From the NCBI GenBank assembly GCA_016748015.1, contig JAAOMT010000735.1:310001-374000 (forward strand): DNA of 64,000 nucleotides, given 5' to 3'. Each line of letters opens with the position of its first letter. The stretch's first letter is position 1. This DNA comes from Geosiphon pyriformis uo1 (Eukaryota > Fungi > Glomeromycota). The translations under genes were made by a program, and so were the position numbers. The notes under the pieces were generated by a model. That model was not told where the DNA came from, did no database searches, and was given only the letters and a program-made list of their open reading frames with translations. Of this stretch, positions 252 through 61,987 are shown piece after piece.

Positions 252-1027
252 ATGGCCTATGCACCAATTGCCAAAATTGAAAAATTTACTGATAAAGAAG
301 ATAACATGCAAGTGTGACTAAACAATGTGAAGAAAACCATTGCAGCCAATAAATGAAACAATGCCAGAGTACTTCAAGCCATTCCATACTTTTTCCAGAA
401 TACTGCCAACTTATGGTATCAAAGCTTGGCCAACAAATCTCAAAATTTTAACACATTTAAGCTTGAGTTCTTACAATATTTTAACAATAATAATAGTATT
501 AATTATCTAGCCAATACCTTCACTACTATTAAGCAAGAACTGAAGCAGTCACTACTTATCTAAAATGCTTCCACAAGAATCTGTGCCAAATTTAGACAAT
601 ACAGACCGATTATTTCACAGTACCACAAATTTTAAATTAATTTATCAGAGGTCTGTATAGTAGTATTCTCCAATATATATGTTTATTACACTTAACAAAT
701 CTTCAAGCAGTAGTTATCTATGTCTGAGATTTTGAAGCAGTTAAATTAGAAGCCAACCATATCTAAGCTGTAAACCTAGTAATGAATAGTTTATCTGACC
801 TGGATTCTAAATTGAAGCAGTTTAGTGATTCAATTAATCAGAAATTAGTGAAATACTTAGTTAACAATCAAGCAATTTATTAATCTCCACAATGACATAA
901 TAATTCAGGAAACTCAAATTATTTCCAAAATCAGACACAGCCATTATTATTAACCAATCAACTGTGGTAAACAAAGATACATGTTTGCTACAATTATGGT
1001 AAACAAAGACACATTAGAATTAGTTGC
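252..1027 (+). pseudogene. Gypsy gag capsid-like region and CCHC zinc knuckle (disrupted)
   Basis: Retrotransposon gag-like peptide with stops and a frameshift. The C-x2-C-x4-H-x4-C knuckle has decayed to CYNYGKQRHIRISC by TGT>TAT. Confidence 0.75.
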
Positions 1028-14244: not shown

Positions 14245-17200
14245 AAAATAAACTTCTTTCTTTCTTACCTTCCCAAATTCCCAAAAAGCGCATTTTCTGG
14301 AAAAAGAAGTTTTTTGTATTTTTTTTTAGTCTATATCAATATTTTTTTACCTAATAGTAACCCATTTTTCGTGGATATAGAGGCTACTGCTAGTAGCACC
14401 ACACCTAAGAAGAAGGCTCCTAAGGGTGCTTTTCAAGGTTCTACTGGTGACTCCTTTTCTCAAAAAAAAAAGGTTGTTCTTAGTAATGTGAAACATTCTG
14501 GTAATGAAAAGAATATATTCTTGAGCAAAGCTGGATCTAGTGGCAGTGTGTATTCTGATGTAAAGAGTCTCTTTGGTGAGGATGAGGATGTTAACATGTC
14601 TGGAATGGATGGTGGGTTTCTTTTGGGTTCAGTGACTACTACACTCAAGGCAAAATGAGTTAATACTGGTGTTGGTTTTGGTTCTATGCTTGGCTTTTCT
14701 AATTTTCATATGGATGATGATAAAGTTGTGCTCCCTCCTCACTTGCCTATCTCTTTAGAGAAGAAATGGATTGACCTTAAAATTATTAAGACTCCTGTGG
14801 AAGTGTTAGTTAAAAAGTCATTTGCTTTGGATATTAATCTCTCAGCTGTGGAGGGTAAATCGGCAACGGCTAAGACTCAGTTAATTAGAAAAATTTTCTC
14901 AACAGTCAATGGTTTTGGGGGGATCACTACCCCCTCAAAATTTAAAGGGATCATCAGATCAACATTTACATCAGAGAAGAGCATAGAAATGGCCATGTCA
15001 TTGGCCAGAGAAAATAAGATCATCATAAACACCAATCTCAAAAAACAAGAAGTGCATTCAGATTGGGCTGTAGTGATCAAAAAAATTCCCATGGACATGC
15101 CTAAGGATATGATTGTCACTGCAGTCACCAAGTTTGGTGAAATTAAGTCAATCAGAATTCAATTAATTGGAATGTGGCAAAAGGCTGTGGTAGAGTTTGT
15201 TGAATCAAGTCAAGCCAATCTGCTAGCATCAAAATGGTCATTCCTGATCAGAAAAGATTCAGTATGTGTTGCCAAAGCTGTGGGAGATCATGATGTCTGG
15301 GCATTAAGAGATCAGTTTAAGGTGTTGTTGTTTACTTTGCCAGTGGGAACGACTGCACATGACCTTGGTACCCTTTTGGAAAAGACTGGAGGAAAGACTT
15401 GCATCATCAATTGTTCATTGAAAACTGGTAATAGATTTCATTGTGCTGTGGTTGGCTTTGAATCTAATGAGGAGTTGGAATTTGTTTTTCTCACTGAGCT
15501 TATTTTCAGTGGTGTTCATTTTTCTTGGGCTAGGTTAGATTTGGTTTGGTGTGGGAAGTGTGAGCATTTTGGTCATTTGGTCTTGGAGTGTGATGTCTCT
15601 GATGTTCTACCTCTTATATCTTCCGAGTTGTTGAAAAAATCTTCTCTTGGTGTGAATTGTCTTTAGCTGGCAAGATTGTATGCCAAAAAAAATGTTTCTA
15701 TCTCTTGTCCTACTGCCTTTGGTAGCAAATCATGGGCTCAAGTGGTGTCTAGTGCCTCCTCTTCTGGTGGCTCTCCTTCCAGTTCTGGTTTGTTTTCTGG
15801 TGGCATGCCTCTTGTTGTGAGCCTCTCTAATTATCAGGTTGTTGGTTTAAATAATTGTTTGGTGGTTTTAGAATGCTCTTTGAGGATTCTTTCAGATCAA
15901 GTTTCTGTTATTCTTAAAAAATTGAGTTTCATTAAACTGGTGCCATTGGCAGCTTCTTTTTGTGCTCCTTCTTTGGCTGTTTCTGTGTCTTTGGCTCCAA
16001 TTGTGAATTTGAATATGGCTCTGAATGACATGTTGGCTTCGGCTGATCCTTTTTTTTCTGGTAGTAGTGAATCTGCTACTGTTCTTAGTTCAAGTGGTTC
16101 AAAAGTCCTTACCTTCAAGATGGGTGGTTTGGAATCTAAGATGTCTGCCCTAAAGGCTTTGTTTGGTTCAATTCTGGTGAGATTAGATCTCTTGTGTTCT
16201 GGTTCAAGTTTGTTTTTGGTTTCTTCATCCCAATGAATGACTTGATTTGGAAGGTGGCTACATGTAACGTTCATAACATCAACATTCCTGCTAAACAAGA
16301 GGATGTTGTACACTGGCATTTTGATTCTGGAAATTTGATTTCGATCATCACAGAGACAAAGTTAAGATCTTCAATTAGACTGTGGATTGCAAATAAATTT
16401 AATGGTGTGTGAATTTTCTCTTCGGGGTTGGATAAGGGTTTTCTTGGNNNNNNNNNNNNNNNNNNNNTGCCTTTGGTAGCAAATCATGGGCTCAAGTGGT
16501 GTCTAGTGCCTCCTCTTCTGGTGGCTCTCCTTCCAGTTCTGGTTTGTTTTCTGGTGGCATGCCTCTTGTTGTGAGCCTCTCTAATTATCAGGTTGTTGGT
16601 TTAAATAATTGTTTGGTGGTTTTAGAATGCTCTTTGAGGATTCTTTCAGATCAAGTTTCTGTTATTCTTAAAAAATTGAGTTTCATTAAACTGGTGCCAT
16701 TGGCAGCTTCTTTTTGTGCTCCTTCTTTGGCTGTTTCTGTGTCTTTGGCTCCAATTGTGAATTTGAATATGGCTCTGAATGACATGTTGGCTTCGGCTGA
16801 TCCTTTTTTTTCTGGTAGTAGTGAATCTGCTACTGTTCTTAGTTCAAGTGGTTCAAAAGTCCTTACCTTCAAGATGGGTGGTTTGGAATCTAAGATGTCT
16901 GCCCTAAAGGCTTTGTTTGGTTCAATTCTGGTGAGATTAGATCTCTTGTGTTCTGGTTCAAGTTTGTTTTTGGTTTCTTCATCCCAATGAATGACTTGAT
17001 TTGGAAGGTGGCTACATGTAACGTTCATAACATCAACATTCCTGCTAAACAAGAGGATGTTGTACACTGGCATTTTGATTCTGGAAATTTGATTTCGATC
17101 ATCACAGAGACAAAGTTAAGATCTTCAATTAGACTGTGGATTGCAAATAAATTTAATGGTGTGTGAATTTTCTCTTCGGGGTTGGATAAGGGTTTTCTTG

Positions 17201-27800: not shown

Positions 27801-28599
27801 TTAATTTCTTGAGATCGGCATTCACTAGGATCTTCATATCAGTAGCCAACTTGGTAGTTTTTATCAAACTCAATTTGGAAGTAAATGTTGTCTGGATGAT
27901 CCCAAAAAATTTTGAAGGGATAGAGGTCTTCCCAAAACCATTGATTTTCAAAAATAATTTCCTGACCATAGCCAGTTTGTCCTAAGCAGATTTTTCAGAA
28001 ATATTGACCAGATCAAAATCCAAAGCAAAAGACTTCTTTACAGACACATTGACCAAATTTTTGAGAGGAGGAGGAAGCACTACAGACTCATCCAAGAGAA
28101 TGTCATCATCATCATCATTGCTCAGAAAGTTGATTTTGCCCAAAGGCTTGTCCAAAGCCTGCTTGGTAATTATTCTCAGACCCTTTGGCGTTTGGTTAAT
28201 GTCCTTTCTTTTAAGAGCATCTCTCTCTTCATAATCCACACTAGTTTCTTCAATCAAAAATTCCTCCTCCATATCTACACTGTCAAATTCGGTGGTATCA
28301 CCAGCTTTAGACTCCCAAAAACCACCAACTGGTTTACTAAATAAAACCATATTATGAACAATACCATCTTTCAAAATACCCTCTTTTTTTTTCTTTTGAG
28401 AGACAACATCTTTACTAACAGTATTCACACCAAAGCCCTTGACAAACTTCTTCATTGCAGCCACACTGGAATCAACAATAGTCTTATAATCAAGCAGAAA
28501 AGGTTTTGACTTATTGTACTGAATTGTAAAAAACTTCTTTCAAAAAACTTTCTTGACTTTTTGTTAAGAATTTGGGACAAAAGAGAAAAAAAAGTTTTA
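21861..28599 (-). mobile_element. Full-length LINE copy 2 (tail-to-tail with copy 1), inactivated
   Basis: ORF1 28524-26665 and ORF2 26668-21989 with many stops. Poly-T at ~21859-21868. 8-bp TSD CAAACATT at 21853-21860 and 28600-28607. Confidence 0.93.
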
Positions 28600-30023
28600 C
28601 AAACATTAATTTACAATAGTAACAAATACTAAATTAAAATATTAAAAAAAGTATTATAATATATTTTTAAATAAAACTACAAATATATATATATATATAA
28701 TAGTTTTAATATTAAGAAAAATAATTTTATTAGCTTTTAATCTTTTACTTTAATTATTTTTTAATCTTTATTTTTAATAAATATTTAAAAAAATAATATT
28801 TACTAGTACTATTTTTTAAATAAAATTATTATTTATTAGTTAAATTTTTTAAAAAAATTATTTTTGATCAAAATTATTCATATTATTATTAATTAATAAA
28901 AGTTTTATTGTAAAAATTAAAAAAAGTGCTAAAAATTATTAATATTCTGTGTTTTTAGATTAGAAAAACACATCAAAAAATTGCAAAATAGTTTCAAAAA
29001 ATTTCAAAACAGTAAATAAATTTTAATTTAGTTTCTGAAAAAAATATATAAATATATACAATTAAAAAAAAATAACTTATATTGTAATATCAAAGAAAAA
29101 TTTTAAAAATATTAGTAAAAATTTCAAAAATACCAGAAATATCGATAATAACTTAAAAAAATTATAGAAATTTCAAAAATTTTATATTATAAAAATTTAT
29201 ATATATATATAAAAATATTAAAAACAGAAAAAATAAATAAGTTTAGTTAAAAACAAGTTTAATTTCTATCTTTTTAAGTAACTTTTATAGTTAGCAATCT
29301 AATATTTAAAGTTTATAATTATTATAAATAAAATTATTAAATTATATTATCTAAATACAATTTTATAAATACTCTTTATCTTATTAAAATTCAATTATTT
29401 TTTTATTAATATTAATAATATTAATACAAAACTATTAATAATACTAAAAAAATAGTTTTAATTATAATTATTAATAAAATATTAATTTTTTATTTTTTAT
29501 TTATTTTATATTTATCAATTAATTAATTAAAAGTATTAAGATTATAATATAAAGAATTTTTGATAAAAAATAACAAAAAAAAATATAAAATATAGTCAAA
29601 AAACTATAATTGCTTACCAAAAAAATAAAAAACATCAGAATAAACTAGTTACTATGTTAAAAAAGTTAAATATTAAGTATTATTTATTATTAATATTAAA
29701 TTTTTGTTTATTATACAAAGAATTTTATTAATAAAATTTTCAGAAAATTTTTAGATTAACTTATAAGTATTAAGTTATAAAAAACTTTAATAATTCAAAA
29801 ATAATTTATAATATTATATTAATTAAGTCTGTTATTAAGTTAATTGGTTTTTTGATTACTTTGGTTTTTTTTGTTAAAATTATTTAAATATTTTTTTTTA
29901 TTATTGCTTAATGAGTGAGGTCCAAACACAACCTAGCACTATACATCAAGGAATTGATCTAAACTAGGCGTGAATTATGCACTTTCTACACGTGACCAGC
30001 CACTCGGACTGATCAGAACAACA

Positions 30024-33000
30024 CTATGCAGCTATATGAACCAACACTGATTCACCTATACCTGAAAAGAACAAGCAAGCTTTGCGAAAACCAAAATGAA
30101 CACCTAAAGCACTAGTAATGCCAAGTAACCTAACCACCCCTGCAGAGAACCTCAAAGCCAAACCATGAACCGAGACGACGGCTGAACCATCTAGTGGAAT
30201 CAGTCCATTCTTCTCCATATACGCATAATGCTTAGCACAAATCGACCAGACATCCTCCTTGAAAGCAAGACCAAGAGAGCACACAAACTTGACAATCTCC
30301 AAAACAGCAATCTTGGGGTCGTGAAAGACAGAAACAGCCTCACTAAACCATCTATTGAAAACAAAGCCCTTAAAAAGAGCCATAGACACAGAGGAATCAG
30401 AAACACTGGATGACAACAGCTGCAATATATCCGAAGAGGAGTGAGATGAGCCAGAAAGTGCTTTCCAGGACCCTATATGAGAATTCAGCAACTGGCGCCA
30501 AACAGACTCGTCAACCTTGCAAGAGAACACATGATCCAACACCTCCACCTTACCACAATACAAGCACAACATGCTAGGATAACGTTTATCATAGAGACAC
30601 TTCTGAACAGCAACCGGCAACTGATGGTGCAAAGACTTCATAAAATAAGTACGCACACTGGACGAATACCTGCTGGTGAATCCTACAGCCATGTGCAAAT
30701 CAGAATGCCACACCAATGACAAATGAGGCCAATCAACCTCAGAAGACAAGCTGCCAACCAAAACCCCAGAACTGGAACCAACCTCTCATCGCGCACGACA
30801 AATAGAACAATAAATATCACAAACAAAATGCCTCAAATTTCCAGAAACAACATCACCATCAGCTGCCAAGAAGTGCTCACTCAAGCGAAGGGGAAGATAC
30901 CAATTGGAGAGAGAAGCAGCACCAGCAATCGCATCGGCACGCTCGTTTCCCGAAACACCAGAATAACCCTTCACCTTGTGAAAGCTAACTCTTAACTTCT
31001 TACTGCGAATTACGTTGACAATATGATGATGTTCGACCCAACACTGATTACGAAAATCGGGACACACCAGATCTAACTCCGACCTGCAAGCATCCAATGC
31101 CAATTGACTATCTGAGAACAAACAAACAGAGCTTGACGGGGGAACACACTCCAGAGCTAAAGCAACAGCCTGCAATTCTGCCAAAGTAGACGACATCAAA
31201 CCCAAAACCCTTACGCCCAAACCCAAACCAATGTCCTCAAAAAAAACAGCAGCACCAGCTCTACAGCCAACCGTGCCAAGACCACTAAGAGATCTATCCG
31301 TATACACTGACAGGCTGCTAGCACCGGTTGCCAAGAGATGATCACGAATAGACACAAATCCACCAGACTCAAGAATGTTCGAAGAACTACCATCTCCCAA
31401 AACTAGAGACTGAACGTAAGAAGATCCTACACTATTGAGAAACAAAACAGAATGCTTGAACCACTCAGGAACTGGGCCACGGAGGTCCAATTTCTTCCAC
31501 CACTTGAAAGTGTACCAATCATAGACAGCACCATGACGGTCACGAAGTTGATTCACAAAGGCAATACCATACCACCGAAGGGAAGGGAGAAACTTGAGAA
31601 ACCTTGACTCACCCAGAACCTCAGACATAGGCACTCCACCATGAGACTGAAAGGAACTAACCAAAGAGCCACCCAGAGACACATTGCAATCGACAAAAAC
31701 ACGAACCATGCCTGCCAGAAAGTTATTAGAAGCACTGACACAAATACGAACAGGAGAACACAATGGATGAACAGGGCGCCAACACAGAACTTGCAAGTCA
31801 TGAGACCTGTGGGAAAACAAACAACCCAAGATACCACCAGAGTTCACAAAACTGACAAGAGAAGTGATCTTGCTTTCAGATTGAACTTGAGAAAATGACT
31901 TCAAACCATAAAACGAAGGGTGGTAAACCACATCATTGGGGAAATCGAGTGGCAAACCGGACTTAAGCTTCAAACCTTTACGAATCAGAGCATTCCACTT
32001 CCCGCACACACCAACAGGAATAAAACTGAACTGAGTTCTATAGCTAACTATTGGATGCAGAACTGCCGACACCAAATACAAAAACTGCTTATCTGAGACC
32101 ACCTTCCTCAACACCAGATTGGTGAAAAAGCGAATGTCCAAATACGCCTTAGCCAAGCTAGGCTTCGAAAGACCCTCAGTTGACAGGAAAATGCCCAGAT
32201 ATTGGTAAGATTCTCCCTTTTTGGCAATAGAAATGGGTGAACTGCTAATAGACAGGGAGGGACTGCTGACTCTGTTATTGATAGGAATGGCTACTGTTTT
32301 GTTGTTGTTAATAGAAATGTCATTGATAAAAAAAAATTCACTAGCAACATTGAAAATATGTTGAGTAGCCATCTGACTGCTACCAACCCAAATTGTATCA
32401 TCAACAAAAGCACCAGCGGCAAAAAAAGAAGAAAACCCAGCCTGGGATTCGGAACGACCATTCTTGGAAACAAAGTGAGAGTTCAACCTATACCCACATA
32501 CACTCTCCTGTCTCTTGACTTCGCACAAAAGAGGATCATAAAATATGCGCCAGAGAAAAGAAGAGAAGACCTCTCTCTGGTCCAAACCATCGTGCACACG
32601 GTAATCACTTGTCAGTCCAAAATCAGTCATGACTCGGTTGGTACAATCCCTATGAATACCACCAAAAAACTGAATAAATTTGCTACACATCTTAATCCTG
32701 ACCAAACTTTTCTCGAGATGCTCCCAGCCAACCAAATCATATGCCTTCCGCATGTCCTGCAGAACCAGCCATAGCTCCCTGTTTTTTTCCAAAGCATCTT
32801 TGACCACCAAACCAATTGCAAAAATAGGGGACTGGGTTGTCATACTCTTCAAAACTGAGAAATTAGCCCCTTGAAGCATGTCAAAAGTACTGCACGCCAA
32901 AGAAATCCTGTCCGAGAGTATCTTGGAAAGAACCTTGCGAGCCATTTCAATTAAAGCAATAGAATATGTGTTCATTAAAACATCTTCCCACTCATAAGGT

Positions 33001-34679
33001 TTCGGAATCATCGAGACTCATGCTTCCTTCCAAGGGCTGGGCACTAATTCATTAGACAAACAAGAGTTCAAGAGCACCAACAACATATCCAAAACTGACC
33101 TATCACAATGTTTCCAAAGCTCATTTGAAATACCCGACAAACCAGCAAGGAACTCATCATACCCAATTGAACACATGACACCAGAAAAAGCTTCGTCAAA
33201 AACATACTCCAGTGGCTGATATTGGAGACGCCAATCATCCGAGACATTATCGACCACCCGACGCTTCCTAGTCCAACTTTCCATAATTGCATCAACCTTG
33301 GACTTGACTTGCTCAGGTTCCAAAATCAACTCGTCATTAACCATCAAATGATCCAGCACAATCTTACGAAATGGCCGCTCCAACACACTTCTTATTGTAT
33401 GACCTTTATTTACCTCAAAGCTTTCCATCCTCTTGTCTATCGCAGATCTGATGCATGCTTCTTTAGCACTCTGAGATTCAATGAGCTTGGACTTTCGATA
33501 AGATTTCCTGGCACCAAAAAGAGCAGAACAAACATGACCAGATTCCACATCAGAGTCCACCAGATCCTGAATGACCGAAGCCTTGACATTGTCCAGAGTA
33601 GCCCAACACCTCATGAGAGAAGCAAAATCCACAGCACACTTCACACGAAATGCCTTAATAATTTTTGAAACCAAAAGCTCCAACTTGTGGAATCTTGACG
33701 ACTCTTTGGTAAAGACACCATCAAATTCCTTGAACCACTTTTTCTTGAACACTTTATTAGCCGAAAGAATCATTATTCTGCGAACAACATCTCACATTGC
33801 ATCCAAATCCAAAAACTTCACAGAAACAGCAAATTCATCTGAGAACATTGTTGCATTAGCCAATGTGGCACACTTAAAATCGATCCATTTACTCTCATTA
33901 GCACCCTTGAAATCAAACTTCCATCTGTCTTTGTTTGCTTGCTTATGAAAAGAGCTCAATTGCATATCCAGAAGCCCATCCAGACCCAAAGACACTGAAA
34001 CAGCTTGATGATCCATGTCAAAGTGCTCACTGACACCCGAAACATTACAATGTACCATCGCATTGACCAGATTTGGAGAGACAAACACGTAATCAATCGT
34101 TCTTTTGACACCCCTAGAATTCTTCCAAGTAGGCATTTTCACAGCTGGGCTCCCGACCAAAGAGTTAATCAATCCCAAATCAAGGCACTTCCTGAAACTC
34201 GCACACTTATGAGAGCCGTCTTCATTAAAATCGCCACCGAGGATAACAAAGGAGGACTTGTTAACAGCCTTTGCGATGATAGAGTTGATTTCGCCCGTCT
34301 GAGAGAACCAGACCACCAAAGAAGCACCAGCGTACAGTCCCAAAATTGACACAGAGAGCCTGTTCTTGAAAAGTAACTTGATAGACAACAACTGACCCGG
34401 GACCTCAGATATCTTGTACACATGTCTCACCAAAGAAGAGTTCATAACCACCGCCACACCAGCACCCAGATACCCAGAATTCAAACCAGTAGTAAACACC
34501 CAAACCCCATCAAACTTGTTAATGATCCAGGGCCGAACCTTACCTTTTAACTTAGTTTCAGTAAAAATCGAAATTGAATTGTCCATGTTCTTATGCCAAC
34601 GAACGACATCACTCTGCTTCGCAGGGTTGTTCATTCCTCTAACATTGCATGTAGCAACTTTCCATACTAATTCACTCAT
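30024..34679 (-). pseudogene. LINE ORF2 (~1550 codons): AP endonuclease, RT, RNase H, C-terminal CCHC; 3 premature TGA
   Basis: ATCNVRGMN, FTETKL, ILGGDFNED, RTIDYVFVS, FDMDH; LQDMRKAYD, GLDQREVFS, AGAFVDDT; VYTDRS, LAELQA, FSDSQ, HKVKGYSGVSGNERAD; CLYCGKVEVLDHVFSC. Stops at 33792, 33018 and 30786 all fall at Trp positions. Confidence 0.92.
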
Positions 34680-36541
34680 TGGAAGGGGGATTGGAAGTTC
34701 GCACCATCAGCCAAAGCCAGACTATCGAAACGAGCGGACAAGATCAACACAGATTTGGAGAGGCCCTCCAACATATTTTCCAATTTCACAACATGGGGGG
34801 ACATAGATGAGCCCACAATCATGGCAGATTCATGGCCATCAGCCATACTTAAGTCCATATCCAATGTCACACTACTTTCCGAGTTCTGTGGTGGGGTGAC
34901 CACTGGCAGCCGGCATCCGTGACCAGGCTGGGGAACCACTGGCACAAGCAAATCTAACCTCTTGGCCAACCCATCAATTTGTTTTGCGAGACTGACAAGA
35001 CTATCTTCGATACTGACCAGTCTTTTTTCCAGATCTTTTGCAACAGGAGAGGTAAGTTTACTATCGACGATGGAACTAAAACTTGTCTTACCACTAGAGA
35101 GAGAGGGAGCAGAGAGAGCACTAACCACTGATGCCCAAGTTTTACCACCAAAAGCCAAAGAATGAAAGATAGGCACAGATCTCTTTGCATAAATTTTCGC
35201 CAATCTGGATTGGTCTTGAACCGAAAGGGGAGCCCTTCTGCCTCCTGCAATTTCAGCACCCTTGACTGTTCTACAACCAAGAGAAGTATGACCAAATTTC
35301 TCACAAACCACACATGAAGCTAAAGAAAGACGGGACCAATGGAGACCAAAGCTCTTTATAACTGGAGTCGTTGCCATTGCATTAACTAATTCCACTTCCG
35401 AGCCAAAACACACAGTGGCACAGCGGGCGTGAGAATAACTGACGGGATTGCGATCGATGAAGCAGGTTTTCCCACCAATAGAACCAATAAAATCCCACAA
35501 ATCATGAGCAGTGGTTCCCATGGGAAGAGTATATAGCAAAGCCCTAAAATTATCTCTGACATCTCACGATTGTTTGTCGATATCAGCCCTGGCCACCCGA
35601 ATCGCATCCTTCCCAATAAGGATAGACCACTTAGAGGCCAGAAAATCAGCCTGGTCTTGATCTTCCAATTCAATGATCGCCTTTTGCCATAAACCCACCA
35701 GCTGTATTTTGATTGACTTAATGATGCCAAATTCGGCTACAGCCGCATGCACAGCCTCCAAAGAAGTTCCCACAGGAATTTTTTTTAGCACAATAGCCCG
35801 ATTTGTATGATTGTTGACAGGGCGCTTGAGATCGGTGTTTACCACAACACCACGGTCATTAGCCAGATTAGTTGCAGTCATCATTGCCTCTTCAGAAGTG
35901 AAAGTGGCCCGAATGATCTCACCAAATTTTGAGGGGGTAGAGGCCCCCCCAAAACCATTTACACCTAAAAAGATTTTTCTGACAAAATTGACTTTTTCCT
36001 AAGAGGATTTACCCACCACCACCACCAGATCAATATCCAAAGTGAAGGACTTGCGAACAGGCACCTGAATGGATGGCTTGACTGAAAAAGGAGGCGGTAG
36101 AAGAAGAGACTCATCCAACACATCACCATCCGCATCGACAGCATCATAATCAATCACACCCAATGGCTTCCTTAATACTTTTTTGGTCTTCACACACAAA
36201 CCTCTAGGCATTTGATCAGGATTCCCTTCTGCGAAAGGACCATCATCATTATAGTCCACACTGGTTTTTTTCACCAAGCATTCTTCCTTCATGTCAATAC
36301 TCTCAGATTCCGTAGTGTTATCAGTCTCCGAACCCCATGAACAAACACCAGGAACTTCAGCAGCAATCTTTCCGTTATCAACACCCTCTGCCAACACACC
36401 TCCCTTCCTCTTTTTCCTTGATGCAACCACTTTAAAACCACTCTCAGAACCAGAAACTTTAGCAGTTTTTTTCATAACAGCAATAACAGAGCCAACAGTG
36501 GCCTCGTAATTGAAAAACAGTTTTGATTTATCGTACTGAAT
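34676..36541 (-). pseudogene. LINE ORF1 (~620 codons from the proposed ATT start): basic/acidic N-terminus, RRM-like domains, CCHC knuckle, coiled coil; 2 premature stops
   Basis: AIVLKKIPVGTS..AVAEFGIIKSIKIQL (RRM-like), CVVCEKFGHTSLGC, DLEKRLVSIEDSLVSLAKQIDGLAKRLD. Stops at 35999 (CAG>TAG) and 35564 (TGG>TGA). Confidence 0.85.
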
Positions 36542-37257
36542 GGTAAAAACTTCTTTCAAAAAAACTTTTGACTTCTTTTTGGGAATTTTGGACGAAGGAG
36601 AGAAAGAAGTTTTTTTTTATTTAAATTTTATTATAATTCTAATTAATCTATTTGGTAATATTACAATAAATATTATTAATTCATTTTTTTTGAAGAAATT
36701 AATTCATAAATATATAATATCTTTATAATAAATAAGTTTTTTTAATATTAAAAGTAATATAAAAAAACTAAATTGTTTTTAAGTAATTTTATCTTTAATA
36801 GTTATAATTTAAATAATTGTATTAATAAGCTAAATAAATTGAATTTATTTCTAATTTATTTTAGTTAGTTTAAATAATTAGTTATATATAAAAAGTGCAT
36901 AAATTATAGCTATTTAAAGTTTTTGTATTTTAGCTTATAGTTAATAATTAAATTATAATTTGTTAAAGCAGTAAAAAAAAATACATTAAAAAAAATAGCT
37001 TAAGAAAAAACTAAAAAAAGTAAAAGATATTTTTTTAGTAACTTTTAGTTAAATAATTAATAAGAGAAAAAGTTTTTTTATTTTTTTAAAAATTTAATAT
37101 AATAATTTATAAATTAATAATTTTTGTTTTAAAATTTAGATTATGTTCTTATTTTATGCATAAATATTTATATAATAATAAGTTATTTTACAATTTTATT
37201 ATATATTTAATAAAAATATTGTTGAATTGTTCAAAGGCATAAAATTACATTTACATA

Positions 37258-41372: not shown

Positions 41373-44300
41373 AAAAAACTTTTTTCTCTTTTTCATCCCA
41401 AATTCCTAAAAAAGAGTCAAAAGTTTTAGTAAAAGAAGTTTTTAGCCATTCAGTATGACAAATTTAAACCATTTTTTGATTTTGAAACCACCATTGGCCC
41501 TACTATTGCTGTTATGAAGAAGGTTGCAAAAGATTCTGGTGCTGGTGGTGGTTTTGGACCTGTCCTATCAAGAAAGAAAAGAAAGGGTGGTGTTTTGGCT
41601 GAAAGTGTTTTGGTAAGAAGGGGTGTTATTAAAACAACTAAAAATCACTCACAAAATTTTGAGACTGGTAACACTATCAAGTTTGAGAGTGTTGACATGG
41701 AGGAAGAGTGTCTTATTGAGGAGACTAGTATCGATTATGGTGAAAGGAATGTATTTGATGGTGGAGACTCCAACTAAACACTAAAGAGCTCAAGTATCAA
41801 AATTAAGACCAAGAAAGTATTGGGCAAACCACTGGGCAAAATCAACTTTGAGGATGGCTTTGATAATGGTGATTTTCTGGATGAGTCTGCCCTCTTTCCA
41901 CCTCCTCTTCTGCTTAAACCTTCAGTTCATGTTTCTGTTCGCAAATTCTTTACTTTGGATATTGATTTGGTGGCTGTTGCTGAGAAATCCTCTCAGAAAA
42001 AATTGAATTTTATCAAGAAAATTTTTTCAGGTGTAAATAGTTTTGGAGAGGCCTCTACCCTCTCAAAATTTGGTAAAATAATTCATGTGACTTTTACTTC
42101 TGAAATGGCGATGATGGTTGCGGGAAAATTGGCTTATGATTGTGATGTTATGGTAAACACCAATCTTAAGCATCCAGTAAACAATTGTACAAATCGGAAT
42201 ATTGTGATTAAGGAGATTCCTGTTGGTACATCAATTGAGACAGTGCGTGCAGCTGTTTCCGAATTTGGGGTTGTTGTGTCAATCAAAATGCAGTTGGTAG
42301 GGCTGTAGCAAAAAGCAATTATCACTTTGGAAGATTCTGATCAGGCTGATTTGTTGGCATCTAAGTGGTCTATCCTTATCAGGAAAGATGCGGTCCGGGT
42401 GGTCAGAGCTGATGTGGATAAACAGACATGGAATTCCAGAGATGAGTTTAAGGCATTGCTTTACACTTTTTCTGTAGGAACTAATACACATGATCTTTGG
42501 GATTTTATTGGTTTAGTGGGTGGAAAAACATGTGTCATTGAGCACAATTCAGTTAACTACACTTGGGCATACTGCACCACAGTGTGTTTTGAGTCTGAGA
42601 ACAATCTAAATTGGGCTCTGGCCAACACTCTGGTGATAAATGATGTTAGATTCCATTGGTTGTGTCTGTTTGCTGTCTTGTGTTCCTCTTGCAATTTTCT
42701 TGGTCATACATCTAGGAATTGTAAATTAGCTGGTGTGTCTTCGAGTCTGAAGGGCAAAAAGGCTCCTCTTTCAGCTCAGAATCAGTTTAGATTGGCAAAA
42801 ATTTATGAAAAGAAGTCTGCTCCTGTTTTTCATCCTTTGGCTTTTGATGGGAAGACTTGAACATCAGTGATTGGCTCTATTCCTTCAGGCACTTCTCTTG
42901 GATACAACTCTCAGCTTGGTTCTATTAGAAATGGTAAACCTCTCCCTCCAGTGGTGAATGATTTGGAAAAACGTTTGGTTAGTATTAAAAGTAGTCTTGT
43001 TAGTCTCACGGAACAAATTGGTGAGTTGGCTAAGAGGTTGAAATCATTCATGCCAGCAGTTTCTCAGTCTAGCCCTGGATGTTAGCTGCCAGTAACCCCT
43101 CTATCACAGAATTAAGGGGAGGATATAGTAATGGGAGTGGATTTAGGTGATGCCACTAGTGACAAGACTGCTGCCGTTTCAGGTTCAACTGCCTCACCTA
43201 AGATTGTAAAATTAAAAAACATGTTGGAAAATCTCTCTGCTTCGGTCATAAGCCTATTAGTGTGCTTGGATGGTTTGGCTTTGGCAGATGGTGCTCCTTT
43301 TCTACCTCTTTCTTAATAAGTAGTCTGGTATGAAAAATTGCCATGTGTAATGTTTGTGGGTTGAACAATCCTGTGAAGCAAGATGATGTTATTCGTTGGC
43401 ACAAGGATATGAACAATTTGGTTTCTATTTTTACAGAGTTGAAACTTAAAGGGAAAGTTCATCCATGGTTGACCAACAAATTTAATGGTGTTTGGGTTTT
43501 TACTTCTGGTCTGGATTCTGGTTCTTTGGGTGCTGGTGTGTTGATTATTGTGAATTTTTTTTTAGCAAAACACATTTGCAAGGTCTCTGAGGTGCCTGGT
43601 CGGCTCCTATCTATCAAGTTGTTTTTCAAAAATAAACTTTCAGTGTCTATTTTGGGACTCTATGCTGGTGCTTCATCAGTGGTTTGGTTTTTCAGGCTGG
43701 TGAAATCAACTTTCTCATTGCTAAAACCATTAATAAGTCTTCTTTTGTCATTCTTGGCAGTAATTTTAATGAAAATAGTTCTCAAAAGTGTGCGAGTTTC
43801 AAAAAGTGTCTTGAGTTGGGGTTGGTTAACTCTTTGATTGGAAGCCTAGCCATTAAGATGCCCACTTGGGTGAATTCTAGGGATGTCATGAAAACTATTG
43901 ATTACATGTTTGTTTCATCGAATCTGGTCAATTCTTTGGTACATCATGGTGTTTTGGATGTTAGTAAATATTTTGATACAGACCACCAGACTGTGTTTAT
44001 GTCTGTGGGCCTAGATGGTTTATTAGATACACACTTGTTTTCTCTTCGCAAGCAGGCAAATAAAAATTGTTGGAAATTTGATGTCAAAAATGCCAGTGAG
44101 GCTAAATGGCTTGAGTTTAAAAATGCTATGGCTGCTAACACTACTATGTTTTCAGGTGCATTTGGTGTTGCTGTGAAGTTTTCTGATTTTGGTGCTATGT
44201 AGGACATCATTCATAAGATCATGGTTCTCTTAACTGATGGTGCTTTCAAGAAAAGATGGTTCAAAAATTTTGATATGGTTCGCAATAAAATATTGTCTAG

Positions 44301-59659: not shown

Positions 59660-61987
59660 AGCCCATAGAGGGGAATCTCATCAGTATCTCAGTATTTTTT
59701 TGTCAACTGAGGGTTTTTCAAAGCCTAACTTGACTAAGACACATTCGGATGTTCATTTTTTTATTAATTTGGTTCTGAAGAAGGCAGTTTCAGATAAGCA
59801 ATTCTTGTATCTGGTGTCAGCAGTTCTCCATCCCATAATTGGCTACAGAATACAGTTTGGCTATATTCCTATTGGTATGTGTGATAAATAGGATGCTCTG
59901 ATTCACAGGAGCTTGAAGCTAAAAGCTGGTCTTTCACTGGATTTTCTTAGTGATATTATTCACCATTCTTCCTTTTATGGTTTAAAGTCATTTTCACAGT
60001 GTCAATCTGAGAGTAAAGTGGTTTCGCTTATTAGTTTTGCGAACTCTAGTGGGATTTTGGGATGTCTGTTTGGTCACAGATCACATGATTTACAGATTCT
60101 GTGTTGGCAGCCCATTCACCTACTGATCTCTCCTGCTCGTATTTGCGTCAGTGTTTCTAATAATTTCTTGGCTGATATAGTTCACATTCTCCTTGATTGC
60201 AATTTGTCTTTGGGTGGCTCTTTGACCAGTGCTTTTTGGTTTTATGACAGGGTTCCTATGTCTGTTGTTCTTGATAAGTCTTTGTTTTTCAAGTTTTTAT
60301 CTTTTTTCCAGTGTTTTGGCATTGCTTTTGTGGATTAGCTTTGTAATCGACATGGTGTTGTTTTTAGCTAGCACATCTTCAAGTGGTAGAAGAGACTGGA
60401 CCCTCATGGCCTGGTTCCTGATTGGTTCAGACCTTCTGTTGCATTTTTTGCAGCTTTTCATTCCTCTTCCACAGCCTCAGTTGGTGCTGGTCTTCTTAAC
60501 TTTTGTGAGTCTGATGATTTTGTGTTTGCCCACAATTGTCTTTCTCAGGTTAACATTGATAGTTTGTCAGTATATACGGATGGTTTTTTGAGGAATTTGG
60601 GCACAGTTGATTGCAGAGCTGGAGCAGTGGTTTTTTTTGAGAACATTGATTTGAGTGTGGGTGTTGGTGTTTAAGGTTTAGTGTTATCTACTTTGGCGGA
60701 GTTACAGGCTATAGTGTTGGCTTTGGAGTGCATGTTTGCAGCTCATTCTGTTAATTTGTTTTCGGATAATCAAGCAGCTTTAGATGCTTGTAAGTCTGAG
60801 TTAAGCCTGGTGTGCCCTGACTTTCGCAATTGATGTTGGGTCGAGCGTTAGTATATTCGGAATGTTATCCACAGTAAGAATTTGAAAGTTAGCTGGCACA
60901 AAGTCAAGGGCCACTCCAGCATTTCAGAGAATAATCGTGCTGATAGTATCACTGATGCTGCTTCTCTATCTGGTTGGTATCTCTCTTTTCATATGGATGA
61001 ACACTTTTTGTTGACGGATGATGGTGTTGTTTCTGGTAATTTTAGACACTTTGTTTGAAATGTTTGTTATGCAGTTTGTCGTGCACACTGGAAGGTCAGT
61101 TCTGGTTCTGGATTTCTGGCTAGTAGTTTGCATTCAGATGTTGACTGGCTTAGCTCTTCTAGGGTTTGGCATCCTGACTTGCATATGGCCACCAGTTTTA
61201 TTAGTAGACTCACAGCTGATACTCATACTTATCTTATGAAGGCTTTGTACTATTGGCTTTCTGTAACTGTTTGGAGGCACATTTACAATAAATGTTACCC
61301 TAATGTTCTGTATCTGTATTGTGGTGAGGTAGAGGTTTCTGATCATGTGTTTTCTTGTGTGGTTGATGATTTGGCTTGTCATCAGGTTCTGGAATCCTGC
61401 ATGTTTTCTTGGAAGTCACTTTCTGGGCTCTTTTTTTCCTCTTCGGTTGTGTTGCAGTTGATGTTATCCTGTGCTCTGGATTTACTGGTTTCCTTAGCTT
61501 TTTACAAGAGTTTTGTTTTCAATGGTTGGCTTCAAAAAGCTGTTACTGTCTTCCATGACCCCAAGATTGCTGGTGTTAAAATTACTGATTTTATGCACTC
61601 TATATGTTCTACTTTTAGGAATAATATTTGGTTGGTCTGTGCCAAGCATTATGCTTTTATGGAAAAAAATGGCCTGATTCCAGTGGACGGGTCATTTGTC
61701 ATCCCAGTTTCTGGTTTGGTTTCGAGATTTTCAGCTGGTGTGGTTAAATTGTTTGGTATTACTGAAGCCTTTGGCGTTCTTTTTGGTTTTTGCAAGTCTT
61801 GTTCGTTTTTTTCAGACATTGGTGACCTGGTGTCTGTTAATATAGTTGTGTAGTGTTGTCTTGACTGGCTCGAGTGGCTGGTCACATGTGGTAAAATGCA
61901 TGATTCACGCCTAGTTTAGATTATTTCATTGATGTATAGTTCTAAGTGGTGTTTGGACCTCACTCATTAAACGTAATAAAAAAAAAA
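59660..61987 (+). mobile_element. 5'-truncated LINE copy 5 (end of RT, RNase H, CCHC, 3' UTR, A-tail)
   Basis: Begins abruptly at HRGESHQYL. Closest to copy 4. 9-bp TSD ATTTAATAT at 59651-59659 and 61988-61996. Confidence 0.93.

What the first reader, a model, noticed from the sequence alone, without database searches (positions are those of the whole stretch)
36470..36541. LINE ORF1 appears to initiate at a conserved non-AUG codon (AUU)
Seen: upstream of the first ATG (MKK), copies 2-4 share an in-frame peptide: IQYNKSKPFLLDYK, IQYDKSKLFFNYE, IQYDKFKPFFDFE. It shows synonymous changes (tac/tat, gat/gac, aaa/aag, cct/cca) and a 3-nt frame-preserving indel. Frame agreement stops just 5' of an ATT at 28524, 36541 and 41448. 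Divergent copy 1 has ATT at the same offset (14341; IFLPNSNPFFVDIE) and has no ATG at the MKK position (PKKK). All four ATTs have a purine at -3. Known: AUU is a documented weak near-cognate start. Inference: ORF1, and through coupling ORF2, is throttled by non-AUG initiation.
Basis: partly seen in the sequence, partly recalled or inferred. Interest (0 to 1): 0.8.

Follow-up and report, generated by a model that had tools for sequence, protein, structure and literature searches.

The report
LINE ORF1 with possible AUU-started extension
In an abundant jumping gene (LINE) of the fungus Geosiphon pyriformis, the 22 or so codons before the first ATG of its first gene evolve like protein-coding sequence. 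They begin at an ATT present in every lineage examined, so a longer protein form started at AUU is plausible but unproven, and an ordinary ATG start is kept as well.

Summary
They belong to a ~6.7 kb non-LTR retrotransposon (APE, RT, RNase H; ORF1 with a CCHC knuckle) of Geosiphon pyriformis, with hundreds of copies.

I compared 90 further 5' ends plus five found inside held loci, about ten lineages in all.
- Every full-length copy starts at the same nucleotide.
- No lineage has an ATG at or upstream of the ATT. Genome-wide the ATT form occurs 344 times and the ATG form once.
- The stretch from ATT to ATG has no in-frame stop.
- Its three to four lineage-level indels are all 3 nt, while 1-nt indels occur just upstream.
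- In column-shuffle tests it behaves as coding in this frame only. The signal weakens when CpG sites are masked.
- No RNA structure explains the conservation.

One argument fails. "Copy 1 has no ATG" is decay: 21 of 30 copies of its subfamily have an in-frame ATG where the window copy has ATA.

The ATG sits at codon 13, 20 or 23/24 depending on lineage, and each lineage has one such ATG within ~25 codons of the ATT. This points to a minor AUU-started form plus a major AUG-started form. It does not support "throttling".

Confidence is about 0.5. No expression or translation data were available.

The parts
29893..36609 (-). LINE copy 3 (subfamily c3), full length but decayed, with several stops and frameshifts
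   Evidence: Exo_endo_phos, RVT_1 and RNase_H domains, and a CCHC knuckle in the ORF1 piece; self-alignment; short A-run at the 3' end; the 5' end is shared by 30 copies.
36542..36609 (-). 5' leader upstream of the ATT. It is pyrimidine-rich at the 5' end, about 90% conserved between subfamilies, and carries 1-nt indels.
   Evidence: 0.34 changes per site, no periodicity; shuffle test not significant.
36539..36541 (-). ATT, the candidate near-cognate start codon, with A at -3
   Evidence: ATT in 61 of 61 c2-c4 copies and 30 of 30 c1 copies. Genome-wide pattern counts are 344 ATT and 1 ATG.
36476..36538 (-). 21 codons between the ATT and the first ATG (QYDKSKLFFNYEATVGSVIAV), the putative N-terminal extension
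   Evidence: coding-type substitution pattern in this frame only. No in-frame stop, and only 3-nt indels between lineages.
36473..36475 (-). First ATG of ORF1 (MKK), the annotated start of gene model G9A89_006549
   Evidence: P0001 is 100% identical and starts here. ATG in 54 and ATA in 7 of 61 copies.
34676..34679 (-). ATGA overlap of the ORF1 stop (TGA) and the ORF2 start (ATG)
   Evidence: The same overlap occurs in copy 1.
28453..28594 (-). Copy 2 (subfamily c2) 5' end: leader, in-frame TGA 28542-28540, ATT 28524-28522, 23-codon stretch, ATG 28455-28453
41379..41516 (+). Copy 4 (subfamily c4) 5' end: leader, in-frame TAA 41430-41432, ATT 41448-41450, ATG 41514-41516
14253..14409 (+). Copy 1 (subfamily c1) 5' end: ATT 14341-14343, decayed subfamily start ATA 14377-14379 (ATG in 21 of 30 relatives), AAG 14407-14409 at the MKK position

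Best explanation
What the element is: an abundant APE-RT-RNase H LINE of Geosiphon pyriformis. It is transcribed from an internal promoter, so every full-length copy begins at the same nucleotide.

Proposed mechanism: scanning ribosomes first meet a conserved AUU in good context (purine at -3), about 70 nt from the 5' end. A minority start there and make an ORF1 protein with 12 to 23 extra N-terminal residues, including a conserved P-F-x-x-D-x-E-A-T block. Most ribosomes scan on to the next in-frame AUG and make the shorter main form. Because the whole stretch is read anyway, the AUG has been free to move within it: codon 13 in c1, codon 20 in c7, codon 23/24 in c2-c6.

Shown: the sequence conservation, the reading-frame behaviour, and the absence of an upstream ATG.
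Inferred: that the stretch is translated, that AUU is the start codon, and the relative use of the two starts.
For: - All full-length copies share one 5' end, and the leader has no ATG.
- ATT is present in all of about ten lineages, although the codons on either side differ: ACC/GCC/ACA/AAC/AAT before it, CAG or TCT after it.
- Genome-wide, the ATT form occurs 344 times and the ATG form once.
- The only upstream in-frame ATG seen, in the copy in L090, is unique to that copy (1 against 150).
- The frame breaks just upstream. The distance from the GAAAGAAG motif to the ATT is 8, 9 or 10 nt depending on lineage. In-frame stops lie at -6 (c3, c2 window copy, c4) or -9 (L078 copy).
- Between ATT and ATG there is no in-frame stop in any lineage.
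- The lineage-level indels there are all 3 nt (at least 3 to 4 events). Only 13 of 56 (23%) neutral indels in dead copies are multiples of 3.
- Substitutions fall 8/7/20 by codon position.
- The Pro codon shows all four third bases, and the hydrophobic codons keep T at position 2.
- Column-shuffle tests are significant in frame 0 only: p=0.008 and p<0.0002. The upstream leader is not significant, and true ORF1 segments are strongly significant.
- No RNA structure explains the conservation: alifold gives -11.5 kcal/mol over about 200 nt, and single-sequence z-scores range from -1.8 to +2.2.
- There is precedent in fungi for conserved AUU, CUG or ACG codons starting N-terminal extensions (PMC5487733).
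Against: - There is no expression, ribosome or peptide evidence. No RNA run was listed.
- The stretch is short, about 66 nt.
- Neutral decay already puts 45% of changes at codon position 3, because CpGs sit on codon borders. Fixed against private changes gives an odds ratio of 1.6 with p=0.21, although the odds ratio is the same as in true ORF1.
- After CpG masking the synonymous-fraction test is no longer significant (p=0.15-0.19). Only the BLOSUM test holds (p=0.004-0.008).
- Lineages c4, c5 and c6 are each represented by a single decayed copy.
- Homology of the first six codons between c1/c7 and c2-c6 is uncertain.
- AUU is a weak start codon (my own knowledge of start-codon selection).
- The stretch evolves more slowly than the start of ORF1 at all three codon positions, so a nucleotide-level constraint may also act on it.
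Confidence: 0.5

Rival explanations
1. ORF1 starts only at the first AUG in the ordinary way. The stretch between ATT and ATG is part of a conserved 5' UTR, for example the downstream part of the internal promoter or a protein-binding RNA element. On this view its coding-like look comes from CpG placement, a transition-rich mutation spectrum and chance.
For: - The whole leader is strongly conserved at the nucleotide level. Positions 1 and 2 of the stretch change at the same rate as the upstream leader (0.36 against 0.34 per site).
- Each lineage examined has one in-frame ATG within the first ~25 codons, as expected if AUG is the functional start.
- The leader has no upstream ATG, as a scanning model needs.
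- The synonymous excess loses significance once CpG columns are masked.
- The contrast of fixed against neutral changes is not significant.
- The standard view is first-AUG scanning for LINE ORF1 (PMC3894237).
Against: - All lineage-level indels are 3 nt, while 1-nt indels occur in the adjoining leader.
- The BLOSUM shuffle test stays significant after CpG masking, and only in this frame.
- The Pro codon shows all four third bases, and the hydrophobic xTx codons vary at positions 1 and 3.
- There is no in-frame stop in about ten lineages of AT-rich sequence.
- In subfamily c1 the conserved PFFVD block lies upstream of that subfamily's own ATG.
- No RNA structure was found.
Confidence: 0.3
2. 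One reading: AUU is the start codon of ORF1, the downstream Met is only an internal residue, and weak initiation at AUU limits the output of ORF1 and, through the overlapping stop and start, of ORF2.
For: - The same coding-type evidence as for the best explanation.
- The position of the ATG is not conserved between lineages, as expected for an internal residue.
- The ORF1 stop and ORF2 start overlap as ATGA, which fits translational coupling.
Against: - The supporting case of copy 1, 'no ATG', is a decay artefact: ATG in 21 of 30 subfamily copies.
- All three lineage groups have one in-frame ATG within the first ~25 codons. By a rough estimate this would happen by chance about 5% of the time at about 2% Met per codon.
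- Each such ATG has a purine at -3. Ribosomes that skip a weak AUU would start there under the established scanning model, so total ORF1 output would not be limited by the AUU.
Confidence: 0.1

Closest known systems
Conserved non-AUG (AUU, CUG, ACG) N-terminal extensions of fungal genes, e.g. Neurospora cpc-1 and its homologues (PMC5487733)
   Same: An in-frame extension upstream of the annotated AUG with no stop. A conserved near-cognate codon in good context. The extension is as well conserved as the main ORF. Both long and short forms are expected.
   Different: Here the gene is a retrotransposon ORF1 and there are no uORFs in the leader. The extension is only 12 to 23 codons long. There is no in vitro or ribosome-profiling support.
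Murine leukaemia virus glyco-Gag, started at an upstream in-frame CUG (from my own knowledge, not checked here)
   Same: A retroelement whose nucleic-acid-binding structural protein has a minor N-terminally extended form started at a near-cognate codon upstream of the main AUG.
   Different: CUG rather than AUU. The extension is about 88 codons and has a known membrane-targeting role. It is a retrovirus, not a LINE.
Canonical LINE ORF1 translation by cap-dependent scanning to the first AUG (review PMC3894237)
   Same: The leader is free of AUGs and the first AUG is in the ORF1 frame.
   Different: The sequence upstream of that AUG behaves as coding, and the position of the AUG shifts between lineages.
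Stop-start overlap coupling of LINE ORF1 and ORF2, e.g. SART1 UAAUG (described in PMC3894237)
   Same: The ORF1 stop and ORF2 start overlap here as AUGA.
   Different: The overlap motif is different. The downstream structure and actual coupling were not tested here.

Membership tests
APE-type non-LTR retrotransposon (LINE) with RNase H | ORF2 with an apurinic-type endonuclease, a reverse transcriptase and an RNase H domain, in that order | tested here: met
   PF03372 (E 6.6e-07), PF00078 (7.6e-08), PF00075 (1.7e-10) on successive pieces of copy 3.
APE-type non-LTR retrotransposon (LINE) with RNase H | ORF1 with nucleic-acid-binding modules (RRM, CCHC knuckle) | tested here: met
   CVVCEKFGHTSLGC (C-x2-C-x4-H-x4-C) in the last ORF1 piece; a related gene model carries PF00076. 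The pieces of copy 3 themselves gave no Pfam hit at E<=0.01.
APE-type non-LTR retrotransposon (LINE) with RNase H | Many dispersed copies with a shared 5' end, 5'-truncated copies, an A-rich 3' end and no LTRs | tested here: met
   600 to 890 candidate sites per query; identical 5' ends with unrelated flanks; a 5'-truncated copy at 59663-61970; short A-run at the 3' end. Target-site duplications were not examined.
Non-AUG-initiated N-terminal extension | No in-frame stop between the near-cognate codon and the AUG in all lineages, with the frame kept by indels | tested here: met
   0 stops in 11 lineage sequences. The indels are all 3 nt, against 23% expected from neutral indels.
Non-AUG-initiated N-terminal extension | Amino-acid-level (coding-type) constraint on the extension, in that frame only | tested here: inconclusive
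   Positive (p=0.003, 0.008, <0.0002). After CpG masking only the BLOSUM test holds (p=0.004-0.008). The contrast with neutral changes gives p=0.21.
Non-AUG-initiated N-terminal extension | A conserved near-cognate codon in favourable context at the 5' limit of the constraint, with no AUG available upstream | tested here: met
   ATT in 91 of 91 aligned copies and in 5 extra lineage copies. Purine at -3 in all lineages. Counts of 344 ATT against 1 ATG, and no shared upstream ATG.
Non-AUG-initiated N-terminal extension | Direct evidence of initiation: footprints, toeprint, an N-terminal peptide, or a reporter | not testable with these tools
   No RNA run was listed for this sequence. No proteomic or ribosome data are at hand.
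Canonical first-AUG start of LINE ORF1 | Sequence upstream of the first AUG evolves as non-coding | tested here: not met
   the frame is kept and substitutions are coding-type.
Termination-reinitiation coupling of ORF1 and ORF2 | Overlapping stop and start codons | tested here: met
   ATGA in copy 3 and copy 1. Function was not tested.

The most novel reading that the evidence does not exclude
A LINE family whose ORF1 protein is made in two forms. One is a conserved, AUU-started, N-terminally extended form carrying a P-F-x-x-D-x-E-A-T block. The other is an AUG-started form. Because the region is read anyway, the AUG has moved within the extension. If so, this would be a LINE counterpart of retroviral glyco-Gag, in an early-diverging symbiotic fungus. 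I found no paper describing this in the library searched.
Probability: 0.5. Interest if true: 0.6.

Novelty: new variant of a known kind. Interest (0 to 1): 0.45.

Why it matters
LINE ORF1 is generally assumed to start at the first AUG. Annotation pipelines follow that assumption, and all Geosiphon gene models for this family do so, or invent upstream exons.

A conserved near-cognate start would mean that part of the protein is missing from LINE annotations. It would give retrotransposons a second ORF1 form with a possibly distinct role, and a way for stress-dependent start-codon stringency to change the balance between the two forms.

If the signal is instead a nucleotide-level feature, it marks a conserved element inside the leader of a very successful fungal LINE.

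Tried and rejected
- Antisense ORF as the source of the 3-base periodicity: rejected, because the matching antisense frame has a stop (my own reading).
- RNA structure as the source of conservation: RNAalifold on 10 copies was weak. Single-sequence folds of 11 lineages had z-scores from -1.8 to +2.2.
- An upstream ATG in some subfamily. Gene model P0026 seemed to start with M at the ATT position, but the contiguous pattern has 0 genome matches, so it may be a spliced-model artefact (I did not see its DNA). The in-frame ATG in the leader of the L090 copy is unique to that copy.
- Fetching DNA for divergent gene models: the look-up of encoding contigs leaves out this genome.
I did not try to harvest sequence by other routes, so c4 is known only from the window, and c5 and c6 from one copy each.
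- RNA evidence: no RNA run was listed.
- Cross-genus relatives: the word search found only Geosiphon proteins. I did not run the large profile search, because the N-terminus evolves too fast for a 25-residue comparison across genera and the claim does not rest on absence of relatives.
- Majority states of subfamilies were computed for the first ~700 nt only, for statistics. No whole or mended element was built.

Full report
**What is there.** The window is G000:C585:310001-374000 of a 128 Mb genome. All 33 protein hits to the ORF1 N-terminus are Geosiphon pyriformis gene models (G9A89_*). One is 100% identical and starts at the MKK ATG.

The finding lies at the 5' end of a ~6.7 kb non-LTR retrotransposon. 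ORF2 carries endonuclease, reverse transcriptase and RNase H domains. The last ORF1 piece has a CCHC knuckle. The window holds four full-length copies from four subfamilies that are 65-71% identical over the aligned stretches (c1 matches only in parts), plus one 5'-truncated copy. All four are decayed, with several stops each.

**Check of the observation.** The ATT codons, the peptides, the purine at -3, the extra codon in copy 2 and the upstream in-frame stops in copies 2 and 4 are all as described.

**More copies.** Five further 5' ends from other lineages lay by chance inside these loci. Together with window copy 4 this gives about ten lineages: c1, c7, c2a-c, c3a-b, c4, c5, c6.

All full-length copies begin at the same nucleotide, (A)n-CTTCTTTCTCTCC, next to unrelated AT-rich flanks. 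This fits an internal promoter and a fixed transcript start.

Copies differ mostly by C>T and G>A changes, many of them at CpG. At TACGAT, the TATGAT and TACAAT forms each occur 7 times in 30 copies. So differences between single copies are largely neutral decay, and only differences between subfamily ancestors can speak to selection.

**The argument from copy 1 fails.** In the c1 subfamily the codon that reads ATA in the window (14377-14379) is ATG in 21 of 30 copies, ATA in 8 and deleted in 1. That subfamily therefore has an in-frame ATG 12 codons after its ATT.

The related c7 lineage has its ATG at codon 20, and c2-c6 have it at codon 23/24. Each lineage has one such ATG within about 25 codons of the ATT. 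This looks like turnover of a start codon that is needed.

**Is there an ATG at or upstream of the ATT?** No.
- ATT is present in 61 of 61 c2-c4 copies and 30 of 30 c1 copies.
- Genome-wide, the ATT form of the motif occurs 344 times and the ATG form once, with controls of 5 and 2.
- The one in-frame ATG seen in a leader (the copy in L090) is unique to that copy, 1 against 150.
- Gene models that reach upstream (P0003, P0026 and others) appear to be spliced or decayed-copy artefacts; the one contiguous test was negative.

**Does the stretch from ATT to ATG behave as coding?**
1. Parsimony changes among six lineage ancestors fall 8/7/20 on codon positions 1/2/3 (p=0.003). True ORF1 downstream gives 133/119/249. 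The leader upstream gives 7/6/10.
2. Neutral decay in dead copies is itself skewed in this stretch (122/52/143) because CpGs lie on codon borders. Fixed against neutral changes gives an odds ratio of 1.62 with p=0.21. True ORF1 gives the same odds ratio (1.60) with p=2e-6. The effect size matches true coding sequence, but the sample is small.
3. A test that shuffles alignment columns gives, for c2-c6, p=0.008 for the synonymous fraction and p<0.0002 for BLOSUM score in frame 0. The other frames score far lower. The upstream leader is not significant, and true ORF1 segments of equal length give p~0.
4. With CpG columns frozen, the synonymous test drops to p=0.15-0.19 and BLOSUM to p=0.004-0.008. 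True ORF1 stays below 0.001.
5. There is no in-frame stop in any lineage.
6. Lineage-level indels in the stretch are all 3 nt and number at least 3 to 4 events. These are one codon present or absent at column 10, one at column 4 in c7, and one near column 23 in c1/c7. Only 13 of 56 (23%) neutral indels are multiples of 3.
7. Just upstream, the distance from the GAAAGAAG motif to the ATT is 8, 9 or 10 nt depending on lineage, so the frame is not kept there.
8. Individual codons look protein-constrained. The Pro codon shows CCG, CCA, CCC and CCT. Two hydrophobic codons keep T at position 2 while positions 1 and 3 vary (F, L, I, V, M). GAT/GAC is invariant as Asp.
9. The block P-F-x-x-D-x-E-A-T survives the deep c1/c7 against c2-c6 split, where the start of true ORF1 is nearly saturated. 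In c1 this block begins upstream of that subfamily's own ATG.

**Other explanations for the conservation.** No convincing RNA structure was found. The antisense frame that would share wobble positions has a stop. A nucleotide-level role, such as a promoter element, cannot be excluded: positions 1 and 2 change no faster than the leader.

**Where would translation start?** Between the variable T-run and the constrained codons, ATT is the only codon one step from ATG that is shared by all lineages. It has A or G at -3. In c3, the c2 window copy, c4 and the L078 copy an in-frame stop lies 6 to 9 codons upstream.

**Mechanism.** I favour leaky scanning with two starts. A minority of ribosomes start at AUU and give an extended ORF1 protein. 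The rest start at the next in-frame AUG. This rests on the established scanning model and on fungal precedents for conserved AUU, CUG or ACG extensions (PMC5487733).

The ORF1 stop and ORF2 start do overlap as ATGA, so coupling of ORF2 to ORF1 is plausible but separate from the present question.

**What is known.** A review of LINE protein synthesis takes first-AUG scanning for ORF1 as given (PMC3894237). Two literature searches found no report of a non-AUG ORF1 start in a LINE. That covers this library only.

**Limits.**
- The stretch is short.
- Three lineages are represented by single decayed copies.
- Part of the signal depends on CpG sites.
- No RNA run was listed, and nothing shows translation.

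Majority states were computed only for the first ~700 nt of subfamilies, for statistics. No repaired or whole element was made.

**Verdict.** Confidence in an AUU-started extension alongside an AUG start is about 0.5. An ordinary AUG-only start with a conserved leader is about 0.3, and AUU as the sole, limiting start about 0.1.

Noticed in passing
window 34676-34679 (-) and about 16232-16238 (+): The ORF1 stop and ORF2 start overlap as ATGA (CAA TGA / ATG AGT in copy 3; CAA TGA / ATG AAT in copy 1). This arrangement is typical of termination-reinitiation coupling.
   Followed up: partly
window 36590-36609 (-), and the first ~20 nt of every full-length copy (L001-L090): The element begins with a pyrimidine tract (CTTCTTTCTCTCCTTCGTCC) that is near-identical across all c2-c6 lineages and matches the first ~17 nt of c1/c7. 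It resembles a 5'-terminal oligopyrimidine or initiator motif.
   Followed up: no
L001-L090, e.g. the TACGAT site 6 nt after the ATT: Copies decay almost only by C>T and G>A changes, with CpG sites split evenly between TpG and CpA products. Some non-CpG G>A changes also occur, e.g. ATG>ATA.
   Followed up: partly
proteins P0003, P0005, P0010, P0012, P0026: Public Geosiphon gene models annotate decayed LINE ORF1 fragments as hypothetical proteins. Some have upstream residues that appear to be invented to supply a Met. P0003 fuses an unrelated N-terminal region to the extension in the ORF1 frame.
   Followed up: partly
L090, about 950-995 (-) = G000:C457:10587-10607: One decayed copy of lineage c6 has a private A>T change that makes an ATG in the leader. 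It lies 12 codons upstream of the ATT, in frame, with no stop. It is the only such copy in the genome.
   Followed up: yes
window 36530-36535 (-) and equivalents: Deamination of TACGAT to TATGAT creates an out-of-frame upstream ATG. Its short ORF ends at a TGA that overlaps the main ATG (TTATGA). This form is common among dead copies.
   Followed up: no
window 59663-61970 (+): A 5'-truncated copy of the same LINE, holding only the last ~2.3 kb.
   Followed up: no
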